Shown here one piece after another: positions 77 through 3,229 of a DNA stretch of 64,000 bases (positions are counted from its first letter, which is position 1; every line of letters begins with the position of its first letter). Where the stretch lies: positions 248,001 through 312,000 of the IMG/VR virus record IMGVR_UViG_3300045996_002337. One strand, written 5' to 3'. The position numbers and the translations under genes are program-made. Below the pieces are notes generated by a model, which had not been told where the DNA came from, searched no databases, and was given only the letters and a program-made list of their open reading frames with translations.

Positions 77-112
77 AATGTTCTATTTAGCAATTATATT
101 ACATGTGCTTTG

Positions 113-188
113 TCTGGGCGACAGGATTCGAACCTGCGACCTCTCACTTCCAAGGCGAGCCGTCTGACCTGACTGACAATACGCCCAG
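113..188 (-). tRNA. tRNA-Pro(TGG) second copy, no encoded CCA, acceptor stem extended by flanking complementarity
   Basis: ctcgc-ct-TGG-aa-gtgag; acceptor ctgggcg/cgcccag; T-loop ttcgaat. Confidence 0.8.
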
Positions 189-444: not shown

Positions 445-663
445 TTTTACCTCTGAATTTTCCTTTTGAGAAGGTGTGCGTTGACAGTTTGGACAGAGCA
501 ACGCCCAGAAACACATGAGATGTTGAACGACGGGATTCGAACCCGCACATTGCGCCGGTGATTAGCCGGTGCTAAGTATACCAATTCCTCACGTTATGCA
601 AACACGTTCAACAAAATCAACCATGCGCGGCTACCAATTACGCCACGAGTGCATTAAAACAAG

Positions 664-794
664 AGCAACAAAGGGCGATAACGAAAAGCCTTTCGGCGAG
701 CCGGCTGCCTTACCACTTGGCGACTATCAATTGCTCGATAGGTAGGATTCGAACCTACGTTTAGCTGGATAGATAATCATCATCAACGGTTGCT
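664..794 (-). ncRNA. YrlA-like Y RNA (circularly permuted tRNA mimic)
   Basis: Order is T-arm (gtaggttcgaatcctac), acceptor-like stem closed by a GCAA loop (ctatcga-gcaa-ttgatag), D-arm (gccaagtggtaaggc); ends pair (agcaac/gttgct, gatgatga/tcgttatc). Confidence 0.7.
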
Positions 795-801
795 AATTCT
801 G

Positions 802-875
802 TGGTGCCCCGTGGGTGAATCGAACACCCGACACCGGGTTACAAAGCCAGTGTTATACCACTTAACTAACGGGGC
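802..875 (-). tRNA. tRNA-Thr(TGT)
   Basis: Loop tt-TGT-aa, cloverleaf, CCA. Confidence 0.9.
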
Positions 876-1297: not shown

Positions 1298-1781
1298 GTT
1301 ATTCATTGAACTCATTTGGATAGGACTCGAACCTACACGAGGACCTCGCGGTTTGCTCTGCTCCTACTACGGAGCCGCGTCTACCAATTCCGCCAGCTTC
1401 AGAGTTCGCCGGGGTAATTAAGCCCGACAGCTGCTAGAAGGAGCGACCCTCTTCGCGACATTTGTTTTGCTCTGAACTCCGGGTTTTCTCCGGCAAAGGT
1501 TCCAGCTTCGGCAGTAAAGATACTCTTTCCAACGTCAGGCCAGACAGCATTCAAGCTGAGGGGAATCGAACCCCCAATCGGATTTTTCTCACATAACGTG
1601 TCAGTTAGGTCCTAGTCCTGGACGACTGCTATTTCCCCTTCACGCTGATGTCTGCTAGTTCAGAGCAAAACAAACATGTTGAACAGTTTCATCCGTAGGA
1701 TAACTGAAAACCTACCACCGCGGGTTGCATCCCGTTTCTCTTCGTGTATGGTGACACTAGCTGATGCTAATCAGCACGTAT

Positions 1782-1871
1782 TGGTGGATGCTGTCCGAAT
1801 CGAACGGACCTTAATGCTCAAAGCATTCATAAGCAAGTAACTTATGCCCACTCGTACCAACTACCACATCC
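1782..1871 (-). tRNA. Atypical class-II tRNA-like gene (nominal anticodon ACT, aberrant D-arm and anticodon loop)
   Basis: T-arm gtccgttcgattcggac, ACCA end, long variable arm aatgct/agcatt, loop ttACTtg lacks purine 37. Confidence 0.45.
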
Positions 1872-2156: not shown

Positions 2157-2289
2157 AATATTCTTTCTACCATTTCTCTATGCACAGGGATAGGACTTGA
2201 ACCTATCATAACCCGTTCCGGGAATCGAACCCCTTCCGCGAGGATGCGTCCAAGCGTGTACCCCAGTACTGACTCTATGCACAGAAAAA

Positions 2290-2640: not shown

Positions 2641-2757
2641 CCTAATGCATAACAATCTACTGACTTTGCTTTTTCAGCAAGGACTTAGTTTAAGTCGTCC
2701 TAGTCTCCACATCTTTTTAACACAAGTCCTGTGGTTGCTTGTGAGTTATGCACTAAG

Positions 2758-2832
2758 TTTTAAAGAACGTTTCGGTTTGTTTAACCGATGAAGCTATTAT
2801 ACAACAGCTTCCGAATTTTGTACACTGATTTT
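2758..2832 (-). promoter_or_regulatory. Promoter + hairpin + BoxA-like module, copy 1 of a ~75 bp direct repeat
   Basis: TGTACA-N17-TATAAT then cggtt..aaccg hairpin and GTTCTTTAAAA; near-identical copy at 2974-3048. Confidence 0.8.
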
Positions 2833-2973
2833 GCAATCAGCATTGTTGAACTCTACCGGCTTTCACTGTTCCGATTTCTCGGCTTCAGCTTCCCCAATTT
2901 ATGGTTTTTCCGATTAGTTCCCCAATCCTTGGCTTTTGCTTCAGGCTCTAAGGGGAACTGTTGTCCAACAAAT

Positions 2974-3048
2974 TTTTAAAGAACATTTCGGTTTGTTTAA
3001 CCGATGAAGCTATTATACAACAGCTTCCGAATTTTGTACAATGATTTT
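2974..3048 (-). promoter_or_regulatory. Promoter + hairpin + BoxA-like module, copy 2
   Basis: Direct repeat of 2758-2832. Confidence 0.8.
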
Positions 3049-3188
3049 TCAATCATTGCGTTTTTATTCTGCCAGCTTCATCCACTCTCAAGGAACCCTA
3101 TCTGGCTGGAAGACCATGCGTACTAACGGGTGGCTCTCCGATCGTTTACCCACTTAAGGGATATTGTGATTTGGTTTCCCTCTTCTAC

Positions 3189-3229
3189 AACCGATGAAGC
3201 TATTGTATCACAGCCTTACGACTTGTACA
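3189..3229 (-). promoter_or_regulatory. Third tRNA-array promoter
   Basis: TGTACA-N17-TACAAT followed by the same agcttcatcggtt start region. Confidence 0.75.

What the first reader, a model, noticed from the sequence alone, without database searches (positions are those of the whole stretch)
664..794. Circularly permuted tRNA mimic (YrlA/Y-RNA-like) inside the tRNA array
Seen: T-arm, then an acceptor-like stem capped by a GCAA tetraloop, then a Gln-type D-arm, all on a long stem formed by the RNA ends. Known: bacterial YrlA RNAs have this T-AS-D order and bind Ro60/Rsr. No Ro gene is in this window. Inference: it partners a Ro protein encoded elsewhere, or acts as a decoy.
Basis: partly seen in the sequence, partly recalled or inferred. 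Interest (0 to 1): 0.65.

Follow-up and report, generated by a model that had tools for sequence, protein, structure and literature searches.

The report
Phage Y RNA mimicking a tRNA
A 131-base gene inside a giant phage's tRNA cluster encodes a small RNA shaped like a tRNA turned inside out, mounted on the kind of bulged stem that binds Ro60, a protein this phage encodes 66 kb away; it is a divergent member of the known YrlA/Y-RNA class, and related phages carry the same RNA in normal tRNA gene order.

Summary
On the minus strand of window 664-794 lie a T arm, a closed 7-bp acceptor stem with a GCAA loop, a D arm, and a long stem formed by the two RNA ends.

The window is part of a 349,660-bp jumbo-phage record. 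That phage encodes a full-length Ro60 (TROVE plus Ro60-vWA, 566 aa) 65.7 kb away on the same strand.

Rfam's YrlA model matches the element end to end but scores only 21.3 bits against a gathering score of 69, the same level as tandem-tRNA artefacts. Decisive evidence came from elsewhere:
- A paralogue lies 3.2 kb away (YrlA 39.1 bits).
- Four orthologues occur in related phages.
- A covariance model built without this element finds exactly 664-794 (77.3 bits, E 2e-19).
- Across the six sequences, 14 base pairs carry compensatory double changes.

The terminal stem carries a Y-RNA-type signature (helix, bulged C, G.U). Two Y-like RNAs directly upstream of the phage's Ro gene have the same signature.

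Related phages, and this phage itself, also carry the same RNA in unpermuted order: an open acceptor stem, often with encoded CCA, and the Ro-type stem capped by a loop where the anticodon loop would be.

Verdict: a divergent YrlA-class Y RNA, most likely a partner of the phage Ro60. Binding and expression are untested.

The parts
664..794 (-). Whole RNA gene 'E1', 131 nt, from the first base of the 5' terminal-stem strand to the last base of the 3' strand.
   Evidence: Leave-one-out covariance model R1 matches exactly 664-794(-), 77.3 bits, E 1.9e-19. Rfam YrlA matches 675-783(-) over the full model at 21.3 bits. No minus-strand ORF of 100 aa or more overlaps it.
789..794 (-). Terminal stem, 5' strand AGCAAC. 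It is followed by bulged C (788) and G (787).
   Evidence: It pairs with 664-669. The pairs are conserved, with compensatory changes in G006 (GACAGC/GCUGUC). The bulged C and the G.U pair are invariant in 6 of 6 sequences.
664..671 (-). Terminal stem, 3' strand UU-GUUGCU. U670 lies opposite G787.
   Evidence: The same 'UU + stem' ending is found in the Ro-adjacent Y-like RNAs of this genome.
777..785 (-). Upper helix, 5' strand UGAUGAUGA. It runs into the conserved (A/G)UUAUC hexamer at 772-777.
   Evidence: It pairs with 676-684 (9 bp in E1; the 7-bp core is conserved). Three pairs show double compensatory changes. The hexamer is conserved in all E-type and U-type members.
676..684 (-). Upper helix, 3' strand UCGUUAUCG.
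759..768 (-). 3' strand of the anticodon-stem-like helix, CCAGC (764-768), and the variable loop UAAAC (759-763).
   Evidence: CCAGC pairs with GCCGG at 701-705: 4 of 5 pairs with a central C.A. The same 5-bp helix with a central mismatch is seen in E2 and L014-B (read). C48 of the loop can pair with G15.
742..758 (-). T arm: GUAGG / UUCGAAU / CCUAC.
   Evidence: All cells are paired, and two pairs show compensatory changes across the family.
724..741 (-). Closed acceptor-like stem: CUAUCGA, GCAA loop, UUGAUAG (7 bp). The predicted RNase P site lies between 731 and 730.
   Evidence: All 7 pairs form. This helix has a completely different sequence in every family member yet stays paired, with 6 pairs showing double changes. 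The RNase P site is inferred from the M. smegmatis YrlA precedent (PMC4201824).
707..721 (-). D arm: GCC(A) / AGUGGUA / (A)GGC.
   Evidence: The D stem covaries between E1 (GCC/GGC) and E2 (GUC/GAC).
701..705 (-). 5' strand of the anticodon-stem-like helix, GCCGG.
   Evidence: See 759-768.
688..697 (-). Extra hairpin GCC-GAAA-GGC, lying between the tRNA-like domain and the upper helix.
   Evidence: Present in E1, E2 and L014-B. It covaries to CCC-GAAA-GGG, CCC-GCAA-GGG and GUC-GAAA-GAC in orthologues. It also occurs in short Y-like RNAs that lack a tRNA domain.

Best explanation
E1 is a YrlA-class Y RNA of a jumbo phage.

Its two ends pair to form a Y-RNA-type module that I take to be the Ro60-binding site: a 6-bp helix, a bulged C, a G.U pair, an internal loop, then a 7-9-bp upper helix. 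The rest folds as a tRNA body (anticodon-stem-like helix, variable loop, T arm, D arm). Its acceptor stem is closed by a GCAA loop, and it has no anticodon loop, so it cannot decode.

Inferred steps:
- It is most likely cut out of the long tRNA-array transcript.
- It is then bound through the bulged stem by the phage's own Ro60.
- By analogy with the Deinococcus, Salmonella and Thermus-phage systems, the RNA would gate the Ro60 ring and tether it to another factor. That factor is probably a host 3'-5' exonuclease such as PNPase, since the phage encodes none.
- The complex would then act on structured RNAs such as tRNAs during infection.

Secondary prediction (about 45% likely): E1 has a 7-bp acceptor stem followed by G and CAA. 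RNase P may therefore cut it before U65 (window 731/730), and the new 3' end may be trimmed and CCA-tailed. The result would be a two-piece RNA with a tRNA-like free end.

Shown here: the structure, its conservation, and its co-occurrence with Ro60. Inferred: expression, processing, Ro60 binding, and the downstream effector.
For: (1) Anatomy at the exact coordinates. Rfam YrlA aligns to it over model positions 1-114.

(2) The same genome encodes a full-length Ro60 on the same strand.

(3) Paralogue E2 lies at G000 245438-245568(-): YrlA 39.1 bits, E 5.7e-8. Its scaffold is nearly identical to E1's, but its T, acceptor and D stems have different sequences that still pair.

(4) A model built from E2 and two orthologues, without E1, finds E1 at 77.3 bits, E 1.9e-19. 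It finds further members in G036 and G006. It also finds the YrlA-like RNAs next to Ro in G023 and an element in G016.

(5) Covariation. With 4 sequences aligned by MAFFT: 97.2% of cells paired and 11 pairs with double changes, against 0-2 in slid controls and 0 of 500 shuffles. With 6 sequences: 96.4% paired and 14 such pairs, against 1-2.

(6) The scaffold signature is a stem, bulged C, CG, then xUUAUC, ending in UU plus the stem complement. It recurs in two RNAs immediately 5' of the Ro gene, at G000 183365-183261 and 183227-182934. It also recurs in short Y-like RNAs inside the tRNA arrays.

(7) In more distant Ro-encoding phages, closed-acceptor YrlA-like RNAs sit directly upstream of Ro (G031, G023, G019, G027).

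(8) Complete genome G034 was found through the RNA pattern, not through Ro. It nevertheless encodes Ro60.

(9) Evidence for the RNase P prediction:
- M. smegmatis YrlA, the one studied YrlA with a 7-bp stem, is cleaved by RNase P and CCA-tailed in vivo and stays bound to Rsr (PMC4201824).
- The phage encodes a CCA-adding-type nucleotidyltransferase.
- Natural unpermuted relatives have an open 7-bp acceptor stem, and 7 of 10 have an encoded CCA.
Against: - The Rfam score (21.3 bits) is far below the gathering score of 69. It equals that of tandem-tRNA artefacts.
- E1 lies 65.7 kb from the Ro gene. Published YrlA genes were defined as lying within 4 kb (PMC4201824).
- The published 5' motif GNCGAAN0-1G is only partly matched. 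E1 reads AACCGUUG, with U where four of its five relatives have A, so the pair next to the G.U pair is lost.
- No RtcB and no PNPase/RNase PH domain were found in the phage.
- There is no expression evidence. The public runs held only short tRNA-like pieces as contigs.
- E-type elements were not found in two large close relatives (G001, G020).
Confidence: 0.8

Rival explanations
1. Ro-independent tRNA mimic. The RNA would act as a decoy or sponge for proteins that recognise the tRNA elbow or acceptor end. Candidates are RNase P, the CCA-adding enzyme, modification enzymes, synthetases, and host anti-phage nucleases or toxins aimed at tRNA. On this view the terminal stem is only a stabilising clamp.
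For: - It sits among tRNA genes, not beside Ro.
- Family members carry different tRNA-type bodies on one scaffold: class I-like in E1 and E2, and Leu-like with a long variable arm in four orthologues. That pattern looks like type-specific mimicry.
- Some close Ro-encoding relatives lack E-type elements.
Against: - The scaffold is the most conserved part of the RNA, not the tRNA body.
- The scaffold is shared with tRNA-less Y-like RNAs and with the RNAs directly upstream of Ro.
- Every complete genome found to carry the scaffold also encodes Ro60.
- Without an anticodon loop it cannot be bait for anticodon nucleases.
- The two ideas are not exclusive. A Ro-bound decoy is possible.
Confidence: 0.13
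2. A circularly permuted tRNA gene, as in the red alga Cyanidioschyzon merolae. Its transcript would be circularised and reopened to give a normal decoding tRNA, perhaps tRNA-Gln.
For: - The gene order (3' half, short linker, 5' half) is that of permuted tRNA genes.
- The stem is 7 bp with U1-A72 and G73.
- This resemblance has been discussed for YrlA before (bioRxiv 10.1101/312249).
Against: - Nothing can form a 7-nt anticodon loop. Where the loop should be there are 26 nt on one side and 37 nt on the other of conserved scaffold, including a helix that covaries and a GNRA hairpin.
- The unpermuted relatives also lack an anticodon loop.
- The phage already has tRNA-Gln(CUG) and tRNA-Gln(UUG).
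- No bacterial or phage splicing endonuclease for such genes is known (general knowledge; also noted).
Confidence: 0.03
3. No function: a chance fusion or decaying remnant of two neighbouring tRNA genes. Alternatively, it is the 5' exon of an intron-containing tRNA, as ARAGORN suggests in intron mode (tRNA-Ala, complement 522-730, with a 126-nt intron).
For: - The array is full of non-canonical tRNA-like pieces.
- Tandem tRNAs score the same as E1 with the Rfam YrlA model.
- ARAGORN with introns allowed joins E1's 5' acceptor strand and D arm to the T arm of the next element.
Against: - The two acceptor strands of E1 pair perfectly with each other across a 4-nt loop, which is not expected of two separate tRNAs.
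- The whole architecture is conserved with compensatory changes in six sequences from five phage records.
- ARAGORN's model needs an acceptor stem with only 5 of 7 pairs, an intron at the non-canonical position 29/30, and an oversized variable region.
Confidence: 0.03

Closest known systems
YrlA RNAs (Rfam RF02553; S. Typhimurium, M. smegmatis, mycobacteriophage ET08; Chen et al. 2014, PMC4201824; structure in bioRxiv 10.1101/312249)
   Same: - The order is T arm, closed acceptor-like stem-loop, D arm, all on a stem made by the RNA ends.
- tRNA tertiary nucleotides are present.
- There is no anticodon loop.
- A Ro60 gene is in the same genome on the same strand.
- Like M. smegmatis YrlA, E1 has a 7-bp acceptor stem.
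   Different: - It scores 21.3 bits against the gathering score of 69.
- It lies 65.7 kb from Ro, inside a tRNA array, instead of within 4 kb.
- The Ro-type helix is recognisable on both strands. By the paper's account this is more like Deinococcus or animal Y RNAs; in the Salmonella and M. smegmatis RNAs only the 5' strand is recognisable.
- It has an extra GNRA hairpin and a conserved xUUAUC hexamer.
- The GNCGAAN0-1G motif is only partly matched.
M. smegmatis YrlA after processing (two pieces, CCA-tailed)
   Same: The unpermuted relatives of E1 and E2 have exactly the topology of the processed mycobacterial RNA at the acceptor end: an open 7-bp stem, a discriminator base and CCA.
   Different: In the phage relatives this form is written directly in the gene, and the Ro-type stem is closed by a loop, giving one piece instead of two. 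Whether E1 itself is cleaved is unknown.
D. radiodurans Yrn1 and animal Y RNAs
   Same: They share a bulged terminal helix with a bulged C followed by G and A, and a 3' strand ending in UU plus stem. The comparison with the human Y RNA sequence is from memory.
   Different: - Rfam's animal Y_RNA model gives no hit at E up to 10.
- In Yrn1 the T and D arms are oriented differently relative to the RNA ends (PMC4201824).
Thermus phage phiLo Ro60 with Yrl1 and Yrl2 (PMC12135203)
   Same: A phage-encoded Ro60 with phage-encoded Y-like RNAs. These were shown in vitro to form a complex with the host PNPase.
   Different: - The phiLo RNAs lie beside the Ro gene. The paper's text mentions tRNA only twice and YrlA never, and I did not check whether Yrl1 or Yrl2 has a tRNA-like domain.
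- The phiLo protein is only distantly similar to this one (E 6e-5, against 4e-102 for D. radiodurans Rsr).
One-piece and two-piece (circularly permuted) tmRNA genes
   Same: The logic is the same: a tRNA-like RNA whose gene exists in a normal and a permuted order in related genomes. A permuted tmRNA gene lies in this very window.
   Different: This is a different RNA, with no mRNA-like part and no evidence of charging.
Circularly permuted tRNA genes of Cyanidioschyzon merolae and some archaea
   Same: The 3' half precedes the 5' half, and the acceptor stem is initially closed.
   Different: Those mature into decoding tRNAs. E1 has no anticodon loop and carries a conserved Ro-type scaffold instead.

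Membership tests
YrlA (Chen et al. 2014; Rfam RF02553) | T stem-loop with tRNA-like conserved nucleotides | tested here: met
   GUAGG/UUCGAAU/CCUAC at 758-742. It aligns to the model's T arm, and all cells are paired across the family.
YrlA (Chen et al. 2014; Rfam RF02553) | D stem-loop with tRNA-like conserved nucleotides | tested here: met
   GCCAAGUGGUAAGGC at 721-707, with A14, G18, G19 and A21. It aligns to the model's D arm.
YrlA (Chen et al. 2014; Rfam RF02553) | [quoted passage not shown] | tested here: met
   7 bp plus a GCAA loop at 741-724. Six pairs show double compensatory changes in the family.
YrlA (Chen et al. 2014; Rfam RF02553) | 5' motif GNCGAAN0-1G in the stem formed by the RNA ends (the likely Ro60 contact) | tested here: inconclusive
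   E1 reads AAC-C-GU-UG and E2 reads AAC-C-GA-UAG. The C-CG core with the bulged C is invariant in 6 of 6 sequences, but the first G and the AA are not kept.
YrlA (Chen et al. 2014; Rfam RF02553) | Encoded within 4 kb of the Ro60 gene on the same strand | tested here: not met
   Same strand, but 65.7 kb away: E1 at G000 248664-248794, the Ro ORF at 181253-182953. Two other Y-like RNAs do lie directly upstream of Ro.
YrlA (Chen et al. 2014; Rfam RF02553) | Score at or above the Rfam gathering score (69 bits) | tested here: not met
   21.3 bits for E1 and 39.1 for E2. Even the phage YrlA-like RNAs next to Ro reach only 30-45 bits.
YrlA (Chen et al. 2014; Rfam RF02553) | Bound by Ro60/Rsr in vivo; modified by TruB and DusA | not testable with these tools
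   This needs co-immunoprecipitation and modification mapping.
Phage 'E-type' family defined here (model R1) | Match to a covariance model built from relatives only | tested here: met
   77.3 bits, E 1.9e-19, model positions 1-147 on window 664-794(-).
Canonical tRNA (RF00005; ARAGORN) | Cloverleaf in 5'-3' order with an anticodon loop | tested here: not met
   ARAGORN's default run makes no call here. RF00005 gives only a 13-bit partial hit. No 7-nt anticodon loop can be drawn.
Circularly permuted tRNA gene (C. merolae type) | The ends of the precursor can be joined to restore an anticodon stem-loop | tested here: not met
   The ends form a conserved, covarying Y-type scaffold of 26 nt plus 37 nt in place of a loop.
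Animal Y RNA (RF00019) | Match to the family model | tested here: not met
   The family does not appear among the hits at E up to 10 on window 640-801.

The most novel reading that the evidence does not exclude
E1 may belong to an undescribed phage family of Ro-scaffold/tRNA chimeras whose working form presents a free, CCA-ended acceptor arm while docked on Ro60.

The gene exists in two circular permutations:
- Closed acceptor stem and open Ro-type stem: E1, E2 and four orthologues.
- Open acceptor stem, often with encoded CCA, and the Ro-type stem capped by a loop where the anticodon loop should be: ten examples, including a direct orthologue of E2 and one copy in this genome.

If both forms converge on one active shape, E1 would be opened by RNase P and CCA-tailed. 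These RNAs, with Gln-like, Leu-like and other bodies, could then be charged or engaged by type-specific tRNA enzymes. That would couple Ro60 surveillance to the state of particular tRNAs during infection.
Probability: 0.3. Interest if true: 0.8.

Novelty: new variant of a known kind. Interest (0 to 1): 0.6.

Why it matters
Y RNAs with tRNA-like domains are known from bacteria and 22 phages. They were found by looking within 4 kb of Ro genes, and their tRNA-like half has no known partner.

This case matters for three reasons.
- A jumbo phage with its own Ro60 spreads at least eight Y-like genes through its tRNA arrays, far from Ro. Both tRNA finders and the Rfam model miss them.
- One scaffold carries different tRNA-type bodies.
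- The same RNA occurs in permuted and unpermuted gene order in related phages. To my knowledge and in the papers I read, the unpermuted form has not been described.

The unpermuted form bears directly on two open questions: how YrlA arose from tRNA, and whether a free CCA end is part of its function. It also offers a simple experimental handle, since the one-piece and two-piece forms can be compared with the cognate phage Ro60.

Tried and rejected
- **Public reads.** No run held more than 12% of the sampled words. All runs were contigs, and the pieces laid were mostly generic tRNA parts. Nothing can be said about E1 expression or its ends.
- **blastn of the E1 D-arm stretch against E. coli genomes.** No match. 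The 'Gln-type' label stays untested.
- **Exact-pattern scans.** AGCCGNCTCGCCGAAAGGC in IMG/VR found one true relative. In metagenome contigs it gave 65 hits, of which only two were true, both from that same phage; the rest were chance hits in GC-rich DNA.
- **blastn of E1 against 27 related records.** It matched only T arms, apart from the known relative.
- **Comparison of E1 and E2 tRNA-like halves with all 51 phage tRNAs.** No close donor, so neither is a recent copy of a phage tRNA.
- **ARAGORN with introns.** Its 'tRNA-Ala with a 126-nt intron' was judged spurious.
- **RtcB and RNase PH/PNPase domains.** Absent from the phage, so there is no phage-encoded repair ligase or exonuclease partner.
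- **Stop-codon recoding as a reason for the two CUA-anticodon tRNAs.** No sign of it.
- **Complex prediction** was not used, because it does not take RNA.
Full report
**Setting.** The window is bases 248001-312000 of a single 349,660-bp IMG/VR virus record (51% G+C, estimated 97% complete). This is a jumbo phage, and in the window nearly all plausible genes lie on the minus strand. ARAGORN finds 51 tRNA genes and a permuted tmRNA gene in the genome. They are grouped in arrays at about 195-199.5 kb, 241-250.4 kb and 258.6 kb. The finding lies in the second array, between tRNA-Thr (window 802-875) and a non-canonical tRNA-like element (522-611).

**The observation.** The minus strand of 664-794 reads as a 131-nt RNA, here called E1. 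Its parts, in order:
- terminal stem 5' strand AGCAAC, then a bulged C, then G and U
- upper-helix strand UGAUGAUGA, running into AUUAUC
- CCAGC, then the variable loop UAAAC
- T arm GUAGG/UUCGAAU/CCUAC
- acceptor strand CUAUCGA, loop GCAA, acceptor strand UUGAUAG
- UC, then D arm GCCAAGUGGUAAGGC, then A
- GCCGG, then CUC
- hairpin GCC-GAAA-GGC, then UUU
- upper-helix strand UCGUUAUCG, then CCCU, UU, and terminal strand GUUGCU

The tRNA tertiary-contact nucleotides are all present. The 'Gln-type' label for the D arm could not be tested, and the phage's own tRNA-Gln genes look different.

**Rfam alone does not settle it.** The YrlA model RF02553 aligns over its full length to 675-783(-), but at only 21.3 bits against a gathering score of 69. 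Most of that score comes from the T, acceptor and D parts. Hits of 20-27 bits also arise where the T arm of one tRNA is followed by the D arm of the next. The authors of the family warned about this artefact (PMC4201824). The thermodynamic fold is not exceptional either (z = -1.26).

**The Ro gene.** A search of the whole genome with Pfam TROVE finds one open frame at G000 181253-182953(-).
- It has a TROVE domain and a Ro60-type vWA domain.
- It matches D. radiodurans Rsr (2NVO) at E 4e-102 over its full length, and human and Xenopus Ro60 almost as well.
- It lies 65.7 kb from E1 on the same strand.
- The phage has no RtcB and no RNase PH/PNPase domain, but it does have a CCA-adding-type nucleotidyltransferase.

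**Relatives of E1.**
- The genome-wide YrlA scan gave a better hit, E2, at G000 245438-245568(-): 39.1 bits, E 5.7e-8. It is also 131 nt.
- E1 and E2 share an almost identical scaffold (both ends plus the GAAA hairpin). Their T, acceptor and D stems differ in sequence yet all pair.
- A simple scaffold search in related Ro-encoding phage records found orthologues in G034 and G033.
- A covariance model (R1) built from E2 and those two, leaving E1 out, recovers window 664-794(-) at 77.3 bits, E 1.9e-19. The next best hit in the window scores 13.8 bits.
- R1 found two more members, G036 (124.8 bits) and G006 (109.2 bits). It also hits the YrlA-like RNA directly upstream of Ro in G023 (38.5 bits, E 9e-9) and an element in G016.
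- Four of the six members have a Leu-like body with a long variable arm. E1 and E2 have class I-like bodies.

**Covariation.** For terminal stem, upper helix, T stem and acceptor stem together (29 pairs):

| Alignment | Cells paired | Pairs with changes on both sides | Slid controls: cells paired | Slid controls: such pairs | Shuffles reaching observed |
|---|---|---|---|---|---|
| MAFFT, 4 sequences | 97.2% | 11 | 36-65% | 0-2 | 0 of 500 |
| Model-fitted, 6 sequences | 96.4% | 14 | 36-64% | 1-2 | 0 of 500 |

The shuffle figures refer to the percentage of cells paired and the number of pairs changed on both sides.

- In the 6-sequence alignment the terminal stem itself shows compensatory changes (GACAGC/GCUGUC in G006).
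- The bulged C and the G.U pair after it never vary.
- The extra hairpin also covaries: GCC/GGC, CCC/GGG and GUC/GAC.
- The 6-sequence alignment was fitted to the model and therefore leans towards the structure. The MAFFT result does not have that bias.

**Link to Ro within this genome.** The scaffold signature is a 5-9-bp stem, a bulged C, CG, the hexamer xUUAUC within about 30 nt, and an ending of UU plus the stem complement. It occurs on the minus strand at eight intergenic places in the genome:

| G000 coordinates (minus strand) | What it is |
|---|---|
| 183365-183261 | Y-like RNA directly upstream of the Ro frame |
| 183227-182934 | Y-like RNA with a perfect 9-bp terminal stem, running into the annotated start of the Ro frame |
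| 196190-196108 | Short Y-like RNA in a tRNA array |
| 199246-199172 | Short Y-like RNA in a tRNA array |
| 247320-247262 | Short Y-like RNA in a tRNA array |
| 245568-245438 | E2 |
| 248794-248664 | E1 |
| 195879-195753 | Unpermuted copy |

The first two occupy the classical position for Y RNAs. The search rule itself is loose: it also gave eight plus-strand hits and two overlapping minus-strand hits near 50.4 kb. I took these for chance because they lack a clean xUUAUC hexamer and the GNRA hairpin; I did not check whether they lie in ORFs. The listed sites stand out by location and by these extra shared motifs, not by the rule alone.

In more distant Ro-encoding phages, closed-acceptor YrlA-like RNAs lie immediately upstream of Ro (G031, G023, G019, G027). 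G023 has two further tRNA-less RNAs with the same CCGAAGG...GGUUAUC...CACUUG signature beside it. G034 is a complete genome that was reached through the RNA pattern. It also encodes Ro60, about 166 kb from its E-type gene.

**The permutation.** The only close database relative of E2 is on IMG/VR contig 3300025597_000014 (L014). It has the same modules in normal tRNA order:
- acceptor strand GGAGAUG, then the D arm
- the same AGCCGCCUC-GCCGAAAGGC stretch and the upper-helix 3' strand
- the terminal stem closed as GUUG-AGACC-CAAC
- bulged C, GA, the upper-helix 5' strand, GGUUAUC
- the T arm, acceptor strand CAUCUCC, then U and CCA

blastn shows the swap directly. L014 4201-4267 matches G000 245505-245440 at 84%, and L014 4273-4325 matches G000 245566-245514 at 85%.

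A search for scaffolds closed by a loop found this 'U-type' repeatedly. Ten examples come from eight phage records, one of them in this genome. In those ten:
- the acceptor stem has 7 bp, fully paired in nine
- CCA is encoded in seven
- the closing stem has 4-6 bp, often under a GAAA, GAGA or UUCG loop
- the bulged C followed by G is kept
- the 7-bp upper helix changes sequence while staying paired, for example GUAAUUG/CGAUUGC, GUGGAUG/CGUCUAC and GAAAAUG/CGUUUUC

The same contig also holds a third topology, in which a complete tRNA-Phe-like body sits on a Y-type stem through its acceptor stem. This arrangement recalls what is described for Deinococcus Yrn1.

**How it most likely works.**

Shown here:
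- a conserved RNA structure made of a Y-type bulged stem and a tRNA body with no anticodon loop
- its co-occurrence with a canonical Ro60 gene

From the literature:
- Ro60 binds the bulged stem of Y RNAs.
- Y RNA gates the Ro60 ring and tethers it to PNPase in Deinococcus and Salmonella (PMC4201824).
- A Thermus-phage Ro60 with its Y-like RNAs assembles with host PNPase in vitro (PMC12135203).

Inferred:
- E1 is released from the array transcript. Three repeated promoter-like units lie upstream at 2796-3229.
- It then binds the phage Ro60 and directs it, with a host nuclease, to structured RNAs during infection.

A further prediction: because E1 has a 7-bp acceptor stem followed by G and CAA, RNase P may open it and CCA may be added. 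This happens to M. smegmatis YrlA. The existence of unpermuted genes with an encoded CCA makes a functional free end plausible. I rate this at roughly 45%.

**Rivals.**
- A Ro-independent decoy cannot be excluded. It explains the conservation of the scaffold less well.
- A permuted gene for a decoding tRNA fails because no anticodon loop can form.
- A tRNA remnant fails on covariation.
- ARAGORN's intron model needs a poor acceptor stem and a non-canonical intron site.

**Novelty.** YrlA RNAs, their likeness to circularly permuted tRNAs, and their presence in phages are all published. Ro-like proteins are annotated in 352 cultured phage records, all under 40% identical to this one. So the class is known.

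What differs here:
- a subfamily that the Rfam model cannot call
- its dispersal in tRNA arrays far from Ro
- several tRNA-type bodies on one scaffold
- natural unpermuted versions

I did not find these points in the papers searched. That is a limited search and not proof of absence.

**Limits.**
- There is no expression or binding data.
- The family alignments hold few sequences (six and ten).
- The comparison with the human Y RNA sequence and the tRNA-Gln resemblance rest on memory.
- The census used simple pattern rules, not a calibrated model.

Noticed in passing
G000 245438-245568 (-), outside the window (locus L004 1492-1622): A paralogue (E2) of the finding, also 131 nt. It is the best YrlA hit in the genome (39.1 bits). 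Its scaffold is nearly identical to E1's, but its tRNA-like body is different.
   Followed up: yes
L014 4200-4346 (+) (= L365 2102-2237); G000 195753-195879 (-) (= L222 1144-1270); eight further loci in alignment A5: Unpermuted 'tRNA with a Ro-type stem-loop in place of the anticodon loop'. It has an open 7-bp acceptor stem, often an encoded CCA, a bulged-C scaffold closed by a small loop, and a covarying upper helix. tRNA finders do not call it.
   Followed up: partly
G000 183365-183261 and 183227-182934 (-), outside the window: Two Y-like RNAs directly upstream of the phage Ro60 frame. The second (about 294 nt) has a perfect 9-bp terminal stem that overlaps the TTG start proposed for the frame, so the real start codon is probably further downstream.
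   Followed up: partly
G000 196190-196108, 199246-199172, 247320-247262 (-); L014 4052-4196 (+): Short Y-like RNAs (59-83 nt) without a tRNA body lie between tRNA genes. In the related contig, a Y-type stem carries a whole tRNA-Phe(GAA)-like body through its acceptor stem.
   Followed up: partly
window 10611-10686 and 10693-10769 (-): Two adjacent tRNAs with anticodon CUA (amber suppressors; ARAGORN labels them Pyl). Stop-to-stop frame statistics give no sign that TAG is read as sense. TAG ends 51 of 418 long frames.
   Followed up: partly
window 11276-11719 (-): A circularly permuted (two-piece) tmRNA gene with tag ANEANYRMAA*. Rfam tmRNA_permuted scores 129 bits and beta_tmRNA 110.9 bits.
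   Followed up: no
window 522-611, 615-655, 253-344, 1313-1404, 1986-2059, 2182-2267 (-): Many non-canonical tRNA-like pieces appear only at relaxed ARAGORN settings. One is a tRNA-Ile(AAU)-like gene with a 14-nt hairpin inserted between the acceptor stem and the D arm (522-611). Just upstream of it lies what looks like a lone 5' half of a tRNA (615-655).
   Followed up: partly
window 1461-1478 with 1657-1674: A perfect 18-nt inverted repeat encloses a 178-nt stretch that contains a T-arm-like element (about 1552-1631). It is probably another structured RNA of unknown kind. Contigs from a wastewater metatranscriptome cover the neighbouring 1306-1491 at over 90% identity.
   Followed up: no
window 99-120 with 182-203: A 22-nt inverted repeat (86% complementary) extends the acceptor stem of the second tRNA-Pro(UGG) gene (112-188) by about 15 further pairs.
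   Followed up: no
window 2752-2862, 2968-3078, 3189-3214: Tandem repeat units (111 nt, 86% identical, 216 nt apart). Each carries a minus-strand promoter-like TGTACA-17-TATAAT followed by a small hairpin, just upstream of the tRNA array. They are probably the array's promoters.
   Followed up: no
window 1782-1871 (-): ARAGORN calls a tRNA-Ser with anticodon ACU, an unusual A at the wobble position. Rfam's tRNA model did not report it at the gathering score.
   Followed up: no
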